64,000 bases of DNA, from positions 2,112,597-2,176,596 of the forward strand of contig NW_003314273.1 of assembly GCF_000143415.4 (NCBI RefSeq). The letters are read 5' to 3'. Shown here piece by piece: positions 38,601 to 51,051 of the stretch. The notes under the pieces were generated by a model. The model made no database searches, had not been told where the DNA came from, and saw only the letters and a list, made by a program, of their open reading frames with translations. The DNA is from Selaginella moellendorffii. Its lineage: Eukaryota; Plantae; Lycopodiophyta. Position numbers and translations under genes: made by a program. How positions within the stretch are numbered: the first letter of the stretch is position 1; every line of letters begins with the position of its first letter.

Positions 38601-38821
38601 GAGTAACTCCAGATTCACTGCCCATTGACGAGCGCAACTGGTCTCAAGATTTTGGAATATATTTAATTAACTTTACTAGCTAAAAGTATTTATCTAACCA
38701 CATTTTAATCTAAGATACAATTAATTACCTTTTCCCTCACTACTATATAACAGCGAAAATGCTTGTGAGGGTTTATCACTTTCCATCCTCTCCAAGAGCG
38801 ATCAAGCAAGACCAATCGATC

Positions 38822-40141
38822 ATGGGAGTTCCTGGGTTTTTCGCCTGGCTCGTATCCAAGCATCCTCGGTGCGTGAGGGACGCGATTGATGGTGCCAAGA
38901 ACAATATTCTTCGCTACGACAACGCAAACTTGTACGTGGACCTCAACACCATCATCTGGGTCATCCTGGAAAGCCACGATTGCCCGCCCACCTTTGCCAC
39001 TTTTTACCAAGAGTTCCTCGACTCGCTCCGCAAGCTCGTCGCCATGGTGGCTCCGACCAAGCTCGTCTTCCTAGCCCTGGATGGAAGGCCTCCCACCCCC
39101 AAGCTCTTCAGCAAGCTCTTCAAGAAGCCGTGTCGCTACAATCGCGATGCTTCTCTCTCCTCCTTGTCCTCCTCGGAGGATGAGCTCGATTCCACCAAAG
39201 GTCAGAAAGGTGATCTCATCCCACGCAATCGCAAGGCCAAGATGGCGATGGTCCGCCATGGAACGCCTTTCATGAACGGGCTGGAGAGTGAACTGCGACG
39301 ATTTGTGGCAAGCATGATGCTGTCAAGTTCATATGATCATCGCTGGAGGAGATCAATGACTAGCTCGAGGCTCCAGTGGATCGTTTCCACGTCCGAGGAG
39401 GACGGGGAGGGCGAGCTCAAGATCTTCAACCACATACGGGCTCTGCCGTTCAACGCCCACGACTTCCACTGCGTGGTTGGACGCGACGCCGACTTGATCA
39501 TGCTGGCTCTCGCTAGCCCGCTCTCCAGGAAGATCAACATCGTCCGCCAGACGCCGAAGGACGGAGTGATGATTTACAAGCTCATCAGCATCGAGACGCT
39601 CGTGCGTGATTTCGAGGTGCAGATGGAAGAGCCGTGCTCCGTGCGGCTGCGGTCCACCATGAGGGATCTCGTGTTCCTATGCTTCCTTCTGGGGAACGAT
39701 TTCCTGCCCGGCCTGGAGGCGCTCACAATCCGAAACAATGGCATCGACAAGCTCCAGCAAACGTACATGGAGGTTTTCAGCGAGGCAGGGGAGTTTATAA
39801 TCAACTGTGATGGGCATGTCAACATGAGAGCGCTGGAGCGATTTCTATTGCATCTGCCGAAGCAACTAAGGACATCAAAGAAGTTAGAATCTAGTGTTGA
39901 GACGAGCATGATAATGTGGTCATCGTATATCAACATTCTAAGGTGGTGCGCAGACTATTATTTCAATGGAGTGGTGTTGGACGAGTCCTACTACTCGTGG
40001 GAGAATGCTCCAGCCATGGGAAGATTCATCAACTTCATGGGCACACACTCATGTGGCACGGTAAATTCAAGACCTCTACTCCCACCAGTTACTGCTACGA
40101 GCGTTCTTAACTTAAGACCTCAGTGGTTGAAATCTTGTTAA
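38822..40141 (+). CDS. Short intronless XRN-family 5'-3' exoribonuclease-like protein (439 aa)
   Basis: MGVPGFFAWL, NLYVDLN, FLALDG.P..K, GTPFM, GEGELKI, HCVVGRDADLIMLAL, DLVFLCFLLGNDFLP and W..DYYFNG. Confidence 0.88.
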   Translation: MGVPGFFAWLVSKHPRCVRDAIDGAKNNILRYDNANLYVDLNTIIWVILESHDCPPTFATFYQEFLDSLRKLVAMVAPTKLVFLALDGRPPTPKLFSKLFKKPCRYNRDASLSSLSSSEDELDSTKGQKGDLIPRNRKAKMAMVRHGTPFMNGLESELRRFVASMMLSSSYDHRWRRSMTSSRLQWIVSTSEEDGEGELKIFNHIRALPFNAHDFHCVVGRDADLIMLALASPLSRKINIVRQTPKDGVMIYKLISIETLVRDFEVQMEEPCSVRLRSTMRDLVFLCFLLGNDFLPGLEALTIRNNGIDKLQQTYMEVFSEAGEFIINCDGHVNMRALERFLLHLPKQLRTSKKLESSVETSMIMWSSYINILRWCADYYFNGVVLDESYYSWENAPAMGRFINFMGTHSCGTVNSRPLLPPVTATSVLNLRPQWLKSC

Positions 40142-40227
40142 TATCGTATGGAATGACTGTAAATTCTAGTGAGAGCAAAAGGGAAGATCGAACTTAGATC
40201 TTTAATACTAATATATGCATTTTAAAA

Positions 40228-40830
40228 TCACAAAGAGTTCCCAGTATGAGTCGGAGGAGCGACCAAGCAATCCAGCCGCCGGCTTCCTGCTATTGCAGAA
40301 GCTTCTACTTCTCGGCACGGGTCTTGGAGAAGAGTGGTGGCAACCTTGAGGTTCTTGACGGCCTGGATGGTCGTGCCTGGCACCTTGCTCACAAGCCCCA
40401 GCAGCACGTCCACCTTGCACCCCTGCTCGATGGTCAGCTCGATGCTCAGCCTGTGGAGCTCCTAATCGACGGCGGCAGCATGAGAATGTGCCATCTCCCA
40501 CGCTTGGATATGATCCCTGGTCTCGATGGAGCACCGCCGATCGAGTTGAGCGAGACGTTGAGCCGGTCCTGCCTGTAAGTCCGGACGTGTGAGGTAGAAG
40601 GCGTTGTGAGGGTCCGTCGTCACCTTTGCCTTGTCGTATCTAGAGTCGAGAGAGTCTGGCACGCCACCAGGAGCGTCGTCCAAGTCCGGTTGAAAAGGCA
40701 TGGTGTCGATGAGCTCCACGGCCTGGCCGAACAGCCCCGTCCGGCACATGGGATCCGTCAGGCAGTCGTAGTGAGCCAGCGTCGTTCTCACGCCATGATA
40801 GTCTTGGATCATGTTGGCGAAGTCAGGTGG
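40228..40830 (-). pseudogene. Decayed PLS-type PPR/E/DYW gene fragment (copy 1)
   Basis: HYDCLTDPMCRTGLFGQAVELIDTMPFQPD (PPR/E1 pattern) and LLGLVSKVPGTTIQAVKNLKV (DYW-domain pattern). Frameshifted. Confidence 0.75.
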
Positions 40831-40856
40831 ATGCCGCTTGATCACTTCCACCATCA

Positions 40857-41937
40857 TCATCCCGTTCTCGCTGAGAGGAGAGTCCCTGCCTTCTTAGCAA
40901 GTTTGCGGCATTTGAAAGCCGGATGATCACAGTAATGATCCACCGCCTCTGGTGCCTTCCTCTTGTTTCGAAGCAGCTCAAACCCCGAGTAGAATAGTCC
41001 TGTTTACAAGGAAAAGAGTTAGCCGATCACAGAAATCACGAAACAAACTTACTGTCAGGGAGAGTAAGTTCCCAGGGATTGAGAGGCGGATGATCACAGT
41101 AATGATCCACCACCGGCGGTGCCTTCCTCTTGTTTCCGAGCAGCTCAAACTCCCGGTAGAATAGCCCTGTTTACAAGGGAAAGAGTTAGCCGATCCCCCG
41201 TACAAATCAAGAAACAAACTTACTGTTACAGAGAGTAACTTTGAGGCGATCAAGAGGCGGGTGATCATAGTAATCCGGTGGTGCCTTCCTCTTGTTTCCA
41301 AGCAGCTCCACTCGATCATGGTAGAATAGCCCTGTTAGGAAAAGAGTTAGCCAATCCCTCAGAAATCACGAAAAAACTTACTGTTAGGGAAAGTATGTTT
41401 GCGGTAATCGAGAGGGCCGTGATCATGGTAATGATCCACCGCCGGAGGTGCCTTTCCAAGCAGCTCCACTGCGCCAAACTCCGGGTAGAATAGCCCTGTT
41501 TACAAAAAAAAGAGTTAGCCAGAAATCACGAAACCAGACGAGATCATGGGAACCTTGACCCAGCTCGGGCTTCCAGGAGAGCTCCTGTAGCTCCACCACC
41601 TTTTCATCGTCACAGCGTCCGATTTGCTGCCGCTCGGGCGGTTTGATGCAAAGCTGTTCGAGGGAGGATTCGTGCTGCGCCAAAAGAGAGCATTAACAGA
41701 AAAGGAAAGGAAGGGGAAAACGAGAAAGGAAGAAGAGCCATACCTTTTCCTGTGCAGCTTCCATTTCCTGAGCCTGCAAGAACGAGGAAAGAAATCTTGA
41801 GAAGAAGACCTAAAAAAACTTACCTGGATGAGAGAGTCCAAATCGTCCGGGAGCTCATCCTTGACATTCCACTCGGTGCATACAAAATCGAGAGCAAAAA
41901 TTATCTCCACAATCTGTAACATCTCCAGCAACACCAT
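40857..41937 (-). CDS. Predicted 7-exon ~247-aa protein with four exon-encoded tandem repeats; candidate repetitive peptide precursor
   Basis: Exons 41937-41824, 41773-41744, 41674-41554, 41495-41382, 41331-41224, 41166-41053 and 40999-40857. Six GT-AG introns of 50-69 nt; the spliced frame is open from ATG to TGA. Confidence 0.6.
40900..41535. repeat. Four ~160-170-bp tandem units, each one intron plus one exon
   Basis: Recurrent GATCAC/GATCCACC...GGTGCCTT...AGCAGCTC...GTAGAATAGyCCTGTT...AAAGAGTTAGCC...AAATCA...AAACTTACTGT. Confidence 0.92.
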
Positions 41938-42028
41938 CTTGGAGAGAGAGAGAGAGAGCGAGAACAAGCAAATACCTAAAGAGAGATTATTTTGTAGTCT
42001 GGAAGTTTAGGGCTTTGGACGATCGAGG

Positions 42029-42300
42029 CATGGTACTCACTGCGCTGGTCGACATGTATGGCGTCTCTGACTCGCTGGATTCCAAGAGGATGGCCTTCTG
42101 GACGGCCGTGATCTTCCCACGTGCATAGCACTCTACCTCACTGGTGATGTTGCATCTCCATCGTTTCGCGAAGATGGGAGAACACGCTCAAATCTCTTCC
42201 CACCTGCCAAGAACTTGGTGTCGTCATGACTGCCTCGCCGTGGCTCCACTTATGCCCAACGAGGGAACTCCCGTACTTCTCCAGCGTCGGGGCTCCGATA
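42029..42300 (+). pseudogene. PPR gene debris
   Basis: Reads LTALVDMYG and FWTAVI, typical PLS-PPR motif fragments; the frame is quickly lost. Confidence 0.45.
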
Positions 42301-42692
42301 CACAGTTTTGTAAATGTTTTAATAATCAAATTATAAAGATGTTTATAGTTTATAAACTTTCAAGTATATTCTATTTAATGTATATAATTTATAACATTCT
42401 TAAATACATATTGCATGTTTCATATAAGTTGATTTGTGTTTTGGTATGCCATTGGATACTGCCATTTATGACTGCTTCAGAAAACAGGTTAACACCAAAT
42501 ATTTCTGGCTCTTTGTTTTGCAACTTCAATTTTTGTAAACTCCCTCTCTTTGCATGGGAGGCAATGAAGTGCCACCATGAAAAGAGAGAGAGGGATGGGA
42601 GGAAGGAGAGCACGGGAGGCCTCCCATTAAACACCATCCTTCTCCACCTAGCTGGCAATGGTGTGGCATGATTACATAGCATTTCTCTCTGT

Positions 42693-45882: not shown

Positions 45883-46690
45883 ATGTTGTTTGAGCTACTA
45901 CAGATAGCAGAAATCGTGCTTGCCTGAATGTCAAGGATGAGCTCCCGAGCAATTTAGCTGCTCTAATTGAGGTGAGTTTTGGGGCTTCTTCTCAATCTCT
46001 CATTCCTGCTTTTAGGCTCAGGAAATTGAAGCTGCACAGGAAAAGGCTAGTGTTTCTCCTTTTCCTCTCTCATTTTCAGACTCTCCTCTCAGCGAGAACT
46101 GGATGATAATGATGGAAGTGATCAAGCGTCATCCACTTGAGATGCAGCAGGTCTTTAACTTCACCAACATCTATCATGGCATGAGCCTGGCGCTGGCTCA
46201 CTACGACTGCCTGGCGGATCCTGTGCCGGAAGGGGCTGCTCGGGCCAAGGACAGCATGCCTTTCGAGCCGGGCGTGGGTGATGCTCCTGGCGGCGTGCCA
46301 GACTCAATCAACTCTCTACTGGTGCAAGGCTCTGGCAATGAAGCCTCACAACACCAAGATCTACTTCGCGGATCATGTGTCCAGAAGGACAGGCTCAACG
46401 TCTCGGACAAGCTCAACTCAATCTAGCGTCAGGTCGGGCGGTGGACCCACGAGATCATGGCAGCTTATGCGACCAGGCTAAACATTGAGTTGACCATCGA
46501 GTGTAGGTGCAGAAGTACCACAGGCCATGCTGCTGAGGCACGCTGCCAGTCAAGAACCTCAAGTCTGCCACCACAATATCAACGTGAGGTTGAGTTCCAC
46601 CACATTGAGAAGGACATGCGTACAGTAGCAGGAAGCCCTCTTGATTGTTTGGCTCCTCCAACTCACATACTAGGAACTCTTTAGATGCAA
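45883..46690 (+). pseudogene. Inverted, broken paralog of the 41937 gene (exons 1-2) plus PPR-DYW fragment (copy 2)
   Basis: MLFELLQIAEIVLA / NVKDELPSNLAALIE|AQEIEAAQEK, then ACTCTCCTCTCAGCGAGAAC..ATGAT and LAHYDCLADP...MPFEP. Matches 41937-40228 on the opposite strand but lacks exon 3 and the repeats. Confidence 0.75.
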
Positions 46691-47325: not shown

Positions 47326-49016
47326 GGCAAGTTCATCTTAATATTGTGTTCTCCCTTCTCTTGGGAAGTAAACCATGCCATTACCATAAAGGCCAAAGGC
47401 AAATACTTCCACAATACTAAAGTGTGCATGTCATAGATTGACTTTCAAGATGTTTATCACATGTGATTACAAACCAAAGGTGGCTGATGATCTCACCTTG
47501 TAATACTTGAAACTTTGGGTGATATGGTCATGTTTATGGTTTTATGTGTTTTATTGTTTCTTATGAAGTTGAGCCCAATGTTATATGACACAAAGATCAC
47601 ATCTCAAAGCTTAAGAAAAGAGGGCATTGTATCAAGATGAGTTTACTGAGAAGTCTTTTATTGAGTCTTTCATTGTGGGTGAAACCTTTTGAGTTCATGA
47701 AAGCCAACCAAATAAAAGAATATGTAATATAATAGAGAATTATATATAATATAATATATGAAATATATTTCAAAATTCTAATAGAAGATACAATAGTGAT
47801 CTATCAAACCAAAATTAATTACTCTACTATTAAGTGGTATATTTATTAAGTTTGAAAGCTTAATTTAGACTAGTTGTAGCTATTGTGAAATGATTAAGCT
47901 TGTTATTATTGAGTCCTACTCTTACATTACTTAAAAGTTTAATAGTTTATCTTATAGATAAATCAATTTGTTGATAATAAACACTTGGGTCTTAAGGTCT
48001 TAACTAGGTCAAATATTTTCTCTAATTGCAAAGTGTAATTTATCTTGAAAAAAAGTAAAAAATTTAAAATGATTTCAAATGAAAAGCATAATGTATATAT
48101 ATATTTCATAATAATAATAATAAAATATATACCATTTTCATTTGAAGATAAAATAAAAAATTTCTAAATTTTTTAAATTTCAAAATAAATATTCTAAGTA
48201 TATCTTAATTCTTTAGAACAAACCAATATATCAACTCAAAGGTATTTAATTCTAAAGCATCTAGTTGTAGATAAGAAACAAGAAAGGAAAGAAAAGGTGG
48301 TGTAAAAGAATTTATTGTATTAGCAAATTAATTTAATTTCTATATTCTGAAGAATTAATCTCTCTTAGAAATTGAATTTCAAAAAACTTGTCTGTGATCA
48401 CATGGCTAAGGACTAGAAAATACAAAGAGGAAAATGAAGTACAATGAAGGGAAAGGAGAACATGAACAAGTTAGAGTAAGAATGTCAAGTATTAAATTGA
48501 AATGCAATAATTAATTGCTAATGGAAAATGAAGTGTTAAAAGTTGAAATAGAAATTTATTTTTTCATCCAAAATTTAATTTTGTTAACATATCTAACAAC
48601 CATCTTTTTGCTGTCACAGTAGCCCAGCAGAGAAAAAAACAATATCCAATAGTACAAATTGTTCCTACCAAAAATAATCGCTATTGTGATGGCAGCGTGG
48701 ACATAACCCATTTTATTATTCAAAGAAGGTCAAAGCACGATTAACTATGCTGCTATGATTCTATGTAATAAAGATTATCTTGTCTGCGTTGGTTATAGTG
48801 TTCTTGTTTTTGACTTATGACCTTATGATTTCTTCAAGATTGTTCCGATCAATGTCGGGACTTCACTCTCCTTTTTCTCTACCTTGAACTCCAAAAGTTT
48901 GTGCGTAGGAAGACTAAGAGAGTCCAAGGATCAATTTCTTGTCTGTTTGGATCCTGAAGCTTGAATAGCCTCTAATTGTGTCTCCCGGAGATCTTCTCTA
49001 GGGTTTGTTTCCGGCG

Positions 49017-51051
49017 ATGGCGTCTGAGAAGCGGCAACTGCAGGAGAATTCGGTGATACAAGTGTTTGGATTTGGGCGCTCCTGGACATTTGTGAATGGC
49101 GCGACTGCGGGAGAAGCCACCGACTTCGTGGCCCGTAGGCACAACAGAGCAGTGGAGGACGTAGCGATGGAGGACATTTCCTCGTCATCAGGAGGAGTGA
49201 TACTAGTCCGTGGGACGCAGCTAGTTGCAGGGCGCAGGTACGTTTTCATCCCCGTCGTCAAGCCCGTCACTGCTCCTAAACGAACGTTCGCAGTCGGGGG
49301 TATTGCTGATCCTGAGAAGCACTACTATTTGGCTCCAGACGTGGCCCTGCTGGTTTCCAAGCTCAAAGGTGGCAGATACTGCGTTCTCACAGGTGCTCGT
49401 CAAACTGGGAAGAGCACAATGGCGATGGCTTGCAAGGCGCAGCTGTCAATGGAACCAGGCTTCTGTGTTGTCTACTTGGACAAGGTGAATGCAGATGGAA
49501 TGACGAGCAAGAGTATGTTCTGGGGTCTGCTCTGGGATCATCTGCATGGCAAGTGTAGCCTGTTGTTTCCGGCCAAGCCTTCGGGAGAGCAGATATTCAC
49601 TGAGTGGAATTTCAAGTCGCTGTTTCTCAAGCAGAATCTGCCCCTCAAGGTGATCCTGATTGTGGACGAGGCTGATACGTTGCTGAGCGCTCCGCCTGAC
49701 TTCCTTGGCGATTTATTCAGCACTCTCAAGGGAATGAGAGACGACACAGACTACAACTTTAACGGTATCTTACTCGTTGGAGTTGAGACGGTCAAGGACT
49801 TCCTGGCACAGCAGCGTCATCATCGACGGAATACTGCTGCTGAACAGAACATCGTCTATACAGAGAGTCCTTCCCCCAGCAGGTACTCACCATTTTCACA
49901 TAGTTTCCTCGCGCAGCCAGGGAGGTTTGGAGTGGAACATGTGGAAGATCTGCTTCGGCAAGCAGAATCTGAGCGACCAGGAGTAAAAATCGCAGTGGAA
50001 AGGATTGCTACCTCTGTTATAGAGTTGACGGGTGGTCACAAAGGCATAGTTGGTTCGTGCTTGGACTACTTAGTGAATAATGAGCTGTGGAATAGCAGGC
50101 AGTGGATCGAGGAAGCAGAATCTGGCCAGCTTGTGAACTATGTCTTTGGGCAGCAAACTTTTGGTCGGATTCTCAAGTCTTTCAGAAGCCATGCAGCTGG
50201 CAAGCACTTCGACCTGCTTAAAACGTTCCTTGCTGCGAAAAGTCGTCACTGTGACGAAGAAATGGTGGTGCAACTGCGAAACCTCATTGCCGAAGGTGTA
50301 TTACAGTCACAGCCAGCAGCGGGCGGTGGCTATGATGTGCAAATTTCTTCACCGCTACTACGAGATGTTATATTTCGACGATGCGTCGTTACAAGCGACA
50401 GCGTCAACCCGCCACCAGATCCTTATGGGCTTGACCACTTATGGGTGATTATGGAGGCACTTAGGAGCTTCGATGGGGAATCAATGTGCAGGCCAGACTG
50501 CTTAAAGGCGACCGGAGAGATTTCCGAGTACTCGTTCCAGTTTGTGTTGTTTACCAGGCTCAAAGCCATTTTCAGGCAAGCGTACCCGTTCATGGACATT
50601 AAGGTCTTACCTGAATCCAAGCAAGCCGTCGAGTATTTGGAGAAGCGAGACACTCAGGTAGAGCGTTTCCAGTTTCTGTTTCATTCAGGTTGTGTGACTT
50701 ATTCTCCGTTTCCAGGAACGGGTTGACATATTAGTGCGAAACAACAACAATTTCACAAAATTCGCGTTTGAGCGAGTTGTCAATGATGATGTGGAAGGCC
50801 ACATGTTGAAGGCTGTGCGCTATGCTTCACAACACAGTGCGCTAGTGTTCGTTATCAATTTCACTATGGAAGATACACCTGAAATTCAAATTCCAGAGCA
50901 TGCCTCAGTAGTCTTCGTCTCGGTGCAGTTAAATCCAAATGGGAACCAAACATCAGCTAAAGTGACAATCGTAGACATCGATGGACCTCAACCGGTGATG
51001 GATTTAGAATTGACTAAGTGGGATGGTAAGATGTTGTTTGATCACATATAA
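49017..51051 (+). CDS. Crinkler/RHS (CR)-like protein: small N-terminal header, P-loop NTPase and C-terminal PD-(D/E)XK-like domain (~658 aa, 2 exons)
   Basis: Walker A GARQTGKS, Walker B VILIVDEAD, and TGGH (STAND GxP-like). The GT-AG intron at 50658-50715 joins the two track ORFs in frame to give EYSFQ...PE...ERVDILV...FAFERV...H...A.RY...VFVINF. Confidence 0.75.

What the first reader, a model, noticed from the sequence alone, without database searches (positions are those of the whole stretch)
40857..41937. Hidden 7-exon gene built from tandem phase-1 exons, each starting with an LFYxxx motif: candidate repetitive peptide (RiPP-like) precursor
Seen: the apparent ~165-bp tandem repeat is four intron+exon units with intact splice sites. 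The internal exon lengths (114, 108, 114 nt) are all multiples of 3 despite indels. The spliced protein is MVLLEMLQIVEIIFALDFVCTEWNVKDELPDDLDSLIQ-AQEMEAAQEK-HESS...ELGQ, then G-LFYPEF-GAVELLGKAPPAVDHYHDHGPLDYRKHTFPN / R-LFYHDR-VELLGNKRKAPPDYYDHPPLDRLKVTLCN / R-LFYREF-ELLGNKRKAPPVVDHYCDHPPLNPWELTLPD / R-LFYSGF-ELLRNKRKAPEAVDHYCDHPAFKCRK... The ORF track misses it entirely. Knowledge (recalled, needs checking): plant burpitide/cyclopeptide-alkaloid precursors have tandem repeats with short Tyr-containing cores, and the Selaginella kraussiana selanine cores are of the VLFYPSY type. Inference: a hydrophobic N-terminus, invariant LFY with variable following residues, KRK basic sites and a conserved His/Asp/Tyr spacer fit a stand-alone precursor whose copy number grows by exon duplication. 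A His/Cys metal-binding repeat protein is an alternative reading. No BURP domain is present in this window.
Basis: partly seen in the sequence, partly recalled or inferred. Interest (0 to 1): 0.78.

Follow-up and report, generated by a model that had tools for sequence, protein, structure and literature searches.

The report
Annotated spikemoss orphan repeat-exon gene copy
The seven-exon gene with four tandem exon-plus-intron units is real in the sequence, but it is an already annotated, frameshifted and apparently silent copy of a multi-copy gene family found only in the spikemoss Selaginella moellendorffii, and nothing tested supports the idea that it makes ring-shaped peptides.

Summary
The exon model is exact: seven minus-strand exons, all GT..AG, 247 aa, with four ~165-bp exon+intron units. 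It is not hidden.

It belongs to a species-restricted family of at least nine annotated loci. Each has a conserved 88-aa N-terminal module, 3-4 phase-1 repeat exons, and a last exon carrying a decayed PPR motif. The LFY frame is the conserved one. All unit-exon length variants are multiples of 3, introns are not, and the other frames carry stops in paralogs. Constraint on the units is weak (dN/dS about 0.6-0.8).

The RNA that confirms the unit junctions comes from a paralog (LOC9653972) with genomic 31-bp and 150-bp deletions. No read carried the window copy's own alleles. The window copy has a 1-nt deletion that cuts off the tail.

The RiPP reading fails the tests made:
- The N-terminus is not signal-peptide-like.
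- The leader motif is absent.
- No BURP gene lies near any of six loci.
- LFY is lost in some paralog units.

No relatives were found outside this species. Function is unknown, and the locus is of low interest.

The parts
41938..42017 (-). 5' untranslated leader with a (CT)n tract just upstream of the ATG
   Evidence: The paralog's RNA contig reaches 42017. TRF finds a GA/CT dinucleotide run at 41942-41963.
41824..41937 (-). Exon 1 (114 nt): ATG and the start of the conserved N-terminal module (MVLLEMLQIVEIIF...)
   Evidence: Conserved in the paralogs. dN/dS for exons 1-3 against the L001 paralog is 0.34.
41744..41773 (-). Exon 2 (30 nt, AQEMEAAQEK)
   Evidence: Also present in the second window copy and in all paralogs.
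41554..41674 (-). Exon 3 (121 nt); it sets phase 1 for the repeat exons. It has no RNA depth in runs X1 and X21, because the expressed paralog lacks it in its genome.
   Evidence: 150-bp genomic deletion in L007.
41382..41495 (-). Repeat exon U1 (114 nt, phase 1-1), G-LFYPEF...
   Evidence: The junction 41330>41381 is seen in RNA.
41224..41331 (-). Repeat exon U2 (108 nt, phase 1-1), R-LFYHDR...
   Evidence: The junctions 41330>41381 and 41165>41223 are seen in RNA.
41053..41166 (-). Repeat exon U3 (114 nt, phase 1-1), R-LFYREF...
   Evidence: The junctions 41165>41223 and 40998>41052 are seen in RNA.
40857..40999 (-). Coding part of the last exon: repeat unit U4 (R-LFYSGF...) fused without an intron to the ancestral last exon. 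In this copy it ends at TGA 40859-40857.
40883..40886 (-). Site of the 1-nt deletion (GGG here, GGGG in L003, L004 and L007). It shifts the LFY frame out of the tail ORF and creates the early stop.
   Evidence: The frame of the L001 paralog agrees with GGGG.
40462..40860 (-). 132-codon tail ORF, a relic of one PPR motif (…HYDCLTDPMCRTGLFGQAVELIDTMP…). In this copy it is out of frame with the gene.
   Evidence: PDB phmmer: synthetic PPR-DYW 9kfx_A, E=3e-4, single stretch. Pfam PPR_1 scores only E=0.055 on the intact paralog P0014. Among the copies there are 0 synonymous and 11 nonsynonymous differences, plus indels that are not multiples of 3.
40228..40413 (-). Possible DYW-domain remnant in another frame (…PGTTIQAVKNLKVATT…). 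It lies in the 3' untranslated part, and the transcript ends near 40244.
   Evidence: Weak evidence: the resemblance is by eye to a recalled DYW consensus, and DWY1 7w86 scores only E=0.92. Pfam finds nothing.
45884..46690 (+). Second, decayed copy of the family. It has exon 1 with a 22-nt frameshifting deletion, intron 1, exon 2 and then directly the tail, with no exon 3 and no repeat units.
   Evidence: It is closest to the L001-type paralog (83.6%).

Best explanation
This is SELMODRAFT_410361, one copy of a Selaginella moellendorffii-restricted, segmentally amplified family of orphan genes. Each locus sits beside a truncated XRN-like gene (beside an XRN-homologous stretch at L001), and most also beside a P450 gene. 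The family's intact form (382 aa, SELMODRAFT_405946) has three parts. The first is an 88-aa acidic, helical N-terminal module encoded by three exons. The second is 3-4 repeat units of 32-39 aa, each encoded by its own symmetric phase-1 exon. The third is a last exon that carries a decayed pentatricopeptide (PPR) motif. The repeat array arose and changes size by tandem duplication or deletion of a ~165-bp exon+intron cassette. Because the exons are phase 1-1 and their lengths are multiples of 3, any number of units keeps the frame (shown). The LFY frame is the one maintained across paralogs (shown). The units evolve almost neutrally at the amino-acid level, and AlphaFold2 gave no confident fold for them. 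I infer that they act as a disordered basic, His/Asp/Pro-rich linker, not as a folded domain or a peptide-precursor array. The window's own copy has a 1-nt deletion that ends the ORF at 247 aa before the tail. No copy-specific RNA was seen for it in the runs read, so it is most likely a decaying or silent member. Most other close copies also carry lesions. What the protein does in the intact members is not known.
For: Identity: window 30462-51937 is 100% identical to GL377577.1, and EFJ29664.1 equals the model over 224 aa and contains the tail ORF. Family: only S. moellendorffii proteins were found, with the unit profile over 1.84e9 representatives and with word searches; accessions are. The same seven exons (114/30/121/114/108/114/545) occur in L003. 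Frame: unit exon lengths are 114, 108, 114, 117, 96, 102, 90 and 99, all multiples of 3, whereas intron lengths are 58, 50, 57, 53, 52, 68, 54 and 51. The alternative frame has stops in L001, L002 and L003, and the third frame has stops everywhere. Selection: exons 1-3 give dN/dS 0.34 against L001, the units 0.82 and the tail 0.82. Among the four close copies the units show 7 synonymous and 14 nonsynonymous differences in the LFY frame, against 2/18 and 4/15 in the other frames. Lesions: a 1-nt deletion shared with L002; 31-bp and 150-bp deletions in L007; breaks in L004. RNA: the unit junctions are used, all diagnostic tail sites in X21 read as L007 (0 of 12-13 reads match the window), and exon 3 depth is about 0 in X1 and X21. 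AlphaFold2 gives mean pLDDT 30 with no secondary structure in the units.
Against: No protein-level evidence exists. Unit dN/dS near 1 and the many broken copies also fit a non-coding or dying family. The structure model rests on six sequences, so it says little. Only four runs were laid, about 12% of the one raw-read run was read, and reads on the unit exons cannot be assigned to a copy, so low expression of this copy is not excluded. RefSeq models of the close copies (288, 219 and 115 aa) do not use the N-terminal module in frame with the units.
Confidence: 0.6

Rival explanations
1. The whole family is transcribed junk. On this view the loci are chimeric pseudogene or lncRNA loci, carried along in a segmental duplication with the XRN-like and P450 genes, and no protein from them matters.
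For: Four of six close copies carry frame-breaking lesions. The expressed copy has lost exon 3 and part of exon 1. The tail shows 0 synonymous and 11 nonsynonymous differences. Unit dN/dS is 0.8-1.0. There is no Pfam hit, no fold and no relatives outside the species.
Against: Exons 1-3 give dN/dS 0.34 between subfamilies that are 76% identical in DNA. All eight unit-exon length variants are multiples of 3, while neighbouring introns and the tail are not. The LFY frame is open in the four units of each of four loci examined (window, L001, L002, L003), while L004 is broken within unit 4; the other frames are not open across paralogs. RefSeq's L001-type models are single ORFs through all parts.
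Confidence: 0.27
2. One reading: a stand-alone RiPP (burpitide-like) precursor. Its LFYxxx cores would be cross-linked by a BURP cyclase encoded elsewhere and released at the KRK sites.
For: xLxYxxF matches the selanine scaffold xLxYxxY/F of SkrBURP from S. kraussiana (PMC11253845; bioRxiv 10.64898/2026.01.20.700549). The architecture is multi-core-like. The residue after LFY varies among near-identical copies: R, P or W in unit 3. Earlier scan notes report BURP genes elsewhere in this genome (not tested here).
Against: The N-terminus is not signal-peptide-like and there is no Ax6YWx7PMP leader, although both features accompany most described precursors (PMC10107690). There is no BURP signature in the window and no BURP gene in the 3-10 kb of flank fetched around six loci. 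LFY is lost from 1-2 of 4 units in the paralogs whose ORFs look healthiest. The putative recognition part is not more constrained than the core. This copy is frameshifted and silent in the runs read. The unit profile hits no BURP protein.
Confidence: 0.03
3. The units form a metal-binding repeat protein. On this view the function lies in the conserved (C/H/Y)DHPPL(D/N) and DHY residues, which would bind Cu or Zn.
For: The D-H pair, Pro and Leu of this motif are invariant in all units that align across six proteins, and K-A-P precedes it.
Against: There is no match to any solved structure or Pfam family. The Cys/His at the flanking positions varies (H, Y, C). Overall dN/dS in this segment is about 1. 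No fold is predicted.
Confidence: 0.1

Closest known systems
SELMODRAFT_405946 (EFJ34920.1, D8R061) and its S. moellendorffii paralogs, all annotated as hypothetical or uncharacterized proteins
   Same: It has the same seven exons, the same frame and the same units. The window's gene is itself EFJ29664.1.
   Different: The window copy has a 1-nt deletion that removes the 130-aa tail from the ORF. JGI's model hid this with an artificial 41-nt intron.
SkrBURP of Selaginella kraussiana (fused burpitide cyclase; cores VLFYPSY, ILLYPSY, FLLYPY; selanines A and B)
   Same: Both come from the genus Selaginella. Both have repeated short motifs with Leu-x-Tyr and an aromatic residue three positions later (xLxYxx[YF]).
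   Different: The window gene has no BURP domain, no secretion signal and no detectable sequence relationship. Its units are 32-39 aa, each in its own exon, and the motif is not conserved across the family.
Stand-alone burpitide precursors (ArbA2 or 'organ specific protein' type, PF10950; Lima et al. 2023, PMC10107690)
   Same: Both are stand-alone repeat proteins with a Tyr in each repeat.
   Different: The window gene lacks the signal peptide, the Ax6YWx7PMP leader, a PF10950 match and a neighbouring BURP gene.
PLS-class PPR-DYW RNA-editing factors
   Same: The last exon keeps one recognisable PPR motif of the type that precedes the E/DYW extension, and perhaps a DYW remnant further 3'.
   Different: Only a relic remains. 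It has no PPR array and no intact deaminase domain, it evolves without constraint, and it is out of frame in this copy. The repeat units themselves are not PPR-like (shuffle test p=0.2-0.5; no PDB hit).
Tandem exon duplication of symmetric phase 1-1 exons, the classical exon-shuffling rule (my own knowledge)
   Same: The exon+intron cassettes are duplicated in tandem, with phase 1-1 and lengths that are multiples of 3, so copy number can change without breaking the frame.
   Different: Here this occurs in a very young, species-restricted gene with almost neutral unit evolution, not in an extracellular module protein.

Membership tests
Stand-alone (split) burpitide precursor peptides | N-terminal signal sequence for the secretory pathway | tested here: not met
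   The first 25 aa have 0 Lys/Arg and 4 Asp/Glu inside the hydrophobic stretch. The segment is among the most conserved parts of the family, with an invariant Glu. It is internal in the RefSeq model P0003 and is predicted as a helix. SignalP itself could not be run.
Stand-alone (split) burpitide precursor peptides | Conserved leader motif Ax6YWx7PMP after the signal peptide (PMC10107690) | tested here: not met
   A regular-expression search of the 247-aa model found no YW, no PMP and no A-x6-YW.
Stand-alone (split) burpitide precursor peptides | Alternating recognition sequence and core with a fully conserved Tyr (or Trp) in every core | tested here: inconclusive
   The Tyr of LFY is present in 4 of 4 units here. 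In the paralogs the motif is missing from unit 2 of P0003 (acceptor shift after a deletion) and from units 2 and 3 of P0006. The 'recognition' segment has pN/pS of about 1.0, against about 0.55 for the LFY segment.
Stand-alone (split) burpitide precursor peptides | Genomic co-localisation with a BURP cyclase (seen for about 58% of known precursors) | tested here: not met
   No CH-x8-12-CH motif occurs in any of the six frames of the window. The neighbours at L001, L002, L003, L004, L006 and L007 include XRN-like, P450, F-box/SnoaL, kinase and AFG1 genes, and no BURP.
Stand-alone (split) burpitide precursor peptides | Pfam PF10950 (organ specific protein) or homology to known precursors | tested here: not met
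   Pfam gives no hit for any exon or for the full-length paralogs. The profile search returns only the family itself.
Stand-alone (split) burpitide precursor peptides | A cross-linked (-2 Da) peptide product | not testable with these tools
   This needs LC-MS/MS of plant extracts or in vitro reconstitution.
Fused burpitide cyclases (SkrBURP type) | C-terminal BURP domain (PF03181) with four Cys-His motifs | tested here: not met
   There is no Pfam hit and no CH-spacing motif in the window.
PPR proteins (applies to the last exon only) | 35-aa helical-hairpin PPR motifs in tandem | tested here: inconclusive
   One motif is recognisable: PDB synthetic PPR-DYW at E=3e-4, and designer PPRs with summed E=7e-20. 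Pfam PPR_1 scores E=0.055, below the cut-off. There is a single motif, not an array.
S. moellendorffii orphan family typified by SELMODRAFT_405946 | The same N-terminal module, phase-1 repeat exons and PPR-relic last exon, beside an XRN-like gene | tested here: met
   The DNA is 100% identical to the locus of EFJ29664.1. Nucleotide identity is 93-97% to L002, L003 and L004 and 76-78% to L001.

The most novel reading that the evidence does not exclude
The LFY-type units of the intact family members could be substrates of a trans-acting tyrosine cross-linking enzyme (a BURP cyclase or another oxidase) encoded elsewhere in the S. moellendorffii genome. That would make this a leaderless precursor class not linked to a BURP gene, which diversifies by exon-cassette duplication. 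A milder version is that the family is a very young translated gene, assembled from de novo exons plus a PPR gene's 3' end, and caught while it expands and decays.
Probability: 0.04. Interest if true: 0.75.

Novelty: new member of a known kind. Interest (0 to 1): 0.2.

Why it matters
As found, it matters little. The gene is already in GenBank as a hypothetical protein, this copy is damaged and silent in the data read, and the natural-product idea fails its tests. The family is a tidy small example of how symmetric phase-1 exon+intron cassettes let a young, species-restricted gene change repeat number without losing its frame. It also shows how reads from near-identical paralogs can mimic alternative splicing: the apparent exon skipping and the '31-nt intron' are genomic deletions in another copy. 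Finally, it flags that two JGI models (EFJ29664.1, EFJ10071.1) bridge a frameshift with an artificial intron.

Tried and rejected
(1) Exon 3 as a skipped cassette exon, and a non-canonical 31-nt intron. Rejected: both are genomic deletions (150 bp and 31 bp) in paralog L007, the source of the RNA contigs.

(2) Dual coding, with the second open frame ('GYST…ITMIT') used when exon 3 is absent. In this copy the frame is open more often than synonymous shuffles predict (0.003). It carries stops in L001, L002 and L003, and it shows 2 synonymous against 18 nonsynonymous differences. Rejected.

(3) The units as degenerate PPR motifs. The unit profile gives no PDB hit at E<=10, although designer PPR chains would amplify a weak signal. 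Smith-Waterman scores against the tail are no better than shuffles, p=0.2-0.5. Rejected.

(4) P0004, the only hit outside Selaginella: 930 aa, from an ENA assembly, with 35-aa repeats containing HKRKAPEVTSYW. It matches only profile positions 12-22 and is an intron-less repeat in an unrelated protein. I treated it as a chance or convergent short motif.

(5) Pfam on every exon, on the tail and on the full-length paralogs found nothing above threshold.

(6) AlphaFold2 on the six-sequence alignment gave pLDDT 30, so no fold search was made.

(7) A literature search for the locus names found no paper.

(8) A look-up of earlier scan findings by sequence was blank.

Procedure note: the joined spliced protein was never sent to a database search. 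Searches used single exons by reference or public protein ids. Exons were joined only inside local scripts, for translation, ORF listing and a tblastn against the window itself.

Full report
**What is in the sequence**

On the minus strand an ATG at 41937 opens a seven-exon model. The exons are:
- exon 1: 41937-41824
- exon 2: 41773-41744
- exon 3: 41674-41554
- exon 4: 41495-41382
- exon 5: 41331-41224
- exon 6: 41166-41053
- exon 7: 40999-40857

Exon lengths are 114, 30, 121, 114, 108, 114 and 143 nt. Every intron (50, 69, 58, 50, 57 and 53 nt) has GT..AG borders. Exons 4 to 7 are entered in phase 1.

Tandem Repeats Finder sees the array as period 167, three copies, 79% matches. The four units align with invariant LFY, ELL, KAP and DH. 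A second frame ('GYST…WSCLETRGRH…ITMIT') is also open through all four units in this copy.

**Identity of the locus**

A profile of the four units was searched against 1.84 billion representative proteins. It returned three proteins: two Selaginella moellendorffii proteins, and one unrelated repeat protein that matches only 11 profile positions. Word searches and cluster look-ups then gave the whole family, all from S. moellendorffii.

It also contains the window's downstream ORF exactly. Its locus, GL377577.1:2143058-2164533 of GCA_000143415.2, is 100% identical to window 30462-51937. The gene is therefore not hidden. It has been in GenBank as a hypothetical protein, with the same exons and the same frame. 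No paper in the searchable library mentions these locus names.

**The family**

The close ('main-type') copies are:
- SELMODRAFT_405946 (L003, 382 aa)
- 438889 = LOC9653972 (L007)
- 410361 (the window)
- 427481 (L004)
- 427485 (L002)
- 427493

They share 93-97% nucleotide identity.

A second subfamily is 76-78% identical in DNA. It comprises LOC112341887 (L001, 413 aa), LOC112341840 and 423038.

Every main-type locus fetched lies next to a truncated XRN-like gene, and four of the five also next to a P450 gene (the called-gene table for L002 lists only the P450). The L001-type locus instead carries stretches homologous to the window's P450-to-XRN-upstream region. The family therefore spread by segmental duplication.

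The window holds a further decayed copy on the plus strand at 45884-46690. It has exon 1 with a 22-nt frameshifting deletion, exon 2, and then directly the last exon, with no exon 3 and no units.

The difference is that the last exon runs on for 545 nt, giving 382 aa.

**The tail**

Downstream of the window's stop codon, a 132-codon ORF (40462-40860) lies in another frame. Its residues 14-60 match PPR motifs. A synthetic PPR-DYW protein scores E=3e-4 in a single stretch, and designer PPR chains score higher by summing their repeats. Pfam PPR_1 stays below threshold on the intact paralog (E=0.055).

Further 3', a stretch in yet another frame looks by eye like a recalled DYW-domain consensus. 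The statistics are weak (E=0.92; no Pfam hit), so I treat this as a lead only.

In L003, L004, L007 and the L001 subfamily the LFY frame continues into this ORF ('…KKAGDSPLSENGMMMVEV…'). The window and L002 share a 1-nt deletion (GGGG to GGG at 40883-40886) that breaks the connection and gives the early stop. JGI's models for these two loci bridge the frameshift with an artificial short intron.

**Which frame is real, and how constrained is it**

Unit exon lengths across the copies are 114, 108, 114, 117, 96, 102, 90 and 99 nt. All are multiples of 3. The introns between them are 58, 50, 57, 53, 52, 68, 54 and 51 nt, and the tail carries indels of 10, 5, 5 and 14 nt. With at least six independent exon length changes, the chance of all being multiples of 3 is about (1/3)^6, or roughly 0.001.

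The alternative open frame has stops in L001, L002 and L003. The third frame has stops in every unit.

Among the four close copies the units show 7 synonymous and 14 nonsynonymous differences in the LFY frame. The other two frames show 2/18 and 4/15.

Between the window and L001, dN/dS is as follows:

| Region | dN/dS | Detail |
|---|---|---|
| Exons 1-3 | 0.34 | pS 0.31, pN 0.12 |
| Units | 0.82 | |
| Tail | 0.82 | |

Within the window's own four units the pooled pN/pS is 1.34. Introns are as similar to each other as the exons, or more so.

The LFY frame is therefore the conserved one, and the N-terminal module is under purifying selection. The units keep only their frame and a few residues: KAP, DH, P-L and LTLP.

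AlphaFold2 on the six-sequence alignment gives mean pLDDT 30, with helices only at the N-terminus and the far C-terminus. That alignment is shallow, so this is weak support for disorder.

**RNA**

Four runs were laid on 40000-42500. The raw-read run X21 is stranded and places the RNA on the minus strand.

The junctions of introns 4, 5 and 6 are present in all four runs (3, 7 and 1 reads in X21). At first sight the transcripts also skip exon 3, lack 31 nt of exon 1, carry an extra C at 40883, and differ at 19 sites in the tail.

Fetching the locus of EFJ34919.1 / XP_024525011.1 (LOC9653972, L007) showed that every one of these differences is genomic there. It has a 31-bp deletion in exon 1, a 150-bp deletion that removes exon 3, the GGGG state and the same substitutions. 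Its unit exons are identical to the window's.

The RNA therefore proves that these exon junctions are used, but in the paralog. At six diagnostic tail sites, 0 of 12-13 X21 reads carry the window's base. Exon 3 has no depth in X1 and almost none in X21. Exon-3-containing contigs in X2 and X9 carry the substitutions of the L001 subfamily, including a junction to 'G-LLYPEFDDH' that matches XP_024518603.1.

Only about 12% of X21 was read and only four runs were laid. 'Silent' here means 'not seen'.

**The RiPP reading**

SkrBURP of S. kraussiana carries VLFYPSY, ILLYPSY and FLLYPY cores. The selanine scaffold is xLxYxxY, and engineered xLxYxxF cores give the monocycle (PMC11253845; bioRxiv 10.64898/2026.01.20.700549). 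Three of the four units here fit xLxYxxF.

The features that accompany known precursors are absent (PMC10107690):
- **Signal peptide.** The N-terminus has four acidic and no basic residues in its first 25 aa. It is among the most conserved parts of the family and is internal in one RefSeq paralog model.
- **Leader motif.** There is no Ax6YWx7PMP.
- **Family membership.** There is no Pfam PF10950 or BURP hit.
- **BURP neighbourhood.** No CH-x8-12-CH motif occurs in any frame of the 64-kb window. No BURP gene lies in the 3-10 kb of flank fetched at six family loci.
- **Conservation of LFY.** In the paralogs with the healthiest ORFs it becomes LLY, is removed together with its acceptor site (L001 unit 2), or is deleted ('RLEIGG', P0006 unit 3).
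- **Core versus spacer.** The presumed recognition segment is not more constrained than the presumed core.

Earlier notes of this scan report split BURP/precursor cassettes elsewhere in this genome. I did not test them, and they do not bear on this locus beyond showing that cyclases exist in the species. I put the RiPP reading at about 3%.

**Verdict**

The finding is a correct piece of gene-structure reading applied to an already annotated, species-restricted orphan gene. This particular copy is frameshifted and was not seen to be expressed.

The best-supported account is a young chimeric family made of an N-terminal module, exon-cassette repeats and a PPR-gene relic. It is weakly constrained and partly decaying.

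The joined spliced protein was not sent to any database search. Exons were searched singly by reference, and full-length comparisons used public protein ids. Exons were joined only in local scripts.

Noticed in passing
window 45884-46690 (+): This is a second, strongly decayed copy of the same family. Exon 1 has a 22-nt deletion that creates a stop, exon 2 is followed by a GC 'donor', and the tail then follows directly. Exon 3 and all repeat units are missing (an ~810-bp deletion relative to L001). Its tail ORF is nevertheless called as a 104-aa gene in the public annotation.
   Followed up: yes
window 38759-40141 (+); also L003 11799-13109, L004 11771-13147, L006 11797-13179, L007 4239-5942: A single-exon, truncated XRN 5'-3' exoribonuclease-like gene (XRN_N plus the start of XRN_M, 436-504 aa) lies tail-to-tail with each of these four family copies. 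A P450 gene lies beyond it. This marks a block that has been segmentally duplicated several times.
   Followed up: partly
L007 (GL377569.1:2799279-2806504) compared with window 41541-41690 and 41834-41864: Reads from a paralog carrying 150-bp and 31-bp genomic deletions, when laid on this copy, look exactly like exon skipping and a non-canonical intron. This is a trap for splice calls in this duplicated, two-haplotype assembly.
   Followed up: yes
L002 9226-9266 and the equivalent place in the window's GenBank model (near window 40890-40930): JGI gene models EFJ10071.1 and EFJ29664.1 jump over the 1-nt frameshift with an artificial ~41-nt intron ('…VDHYC|RDSPLSENG…'). The deposited proteins are therefore not what the DNA encodes.
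   Followed up: partly
window 40886-41495 (-), frame of exon nucleotide 1: A second frame stays open through all four units in this copy. Only 0.3% of synonymous-codon permutations keep it open. It is closed by stops in L001, L002 and L003, so it looks like chance plus shared ancestry of the units.
   Followed up: yes
L005 3001-5793 (ENA assembly ERZ25074135, 3.8-Mb contig): This is the only hit to the unit profile outside Selaginella. It is a 930-aa intron-less ORF with at least 11 tandem 35-aa repeats ('…SHLHKRKAPEVTSYWSVFEEVAAELGPLSYPLRLL…') behind a region that looks to me like a nucleoside-diphosphate-kinase domain. The organism is unknown. The match is probably a coincidental KRKAPE motif.
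   Followed up: partly
window 49005-50726 (+): A 573-aa ORF in the AT-rich repeat island has only a weak AAA_22 match (E=8.7e-5, below the Pfam cut-off).
   Followed up: no
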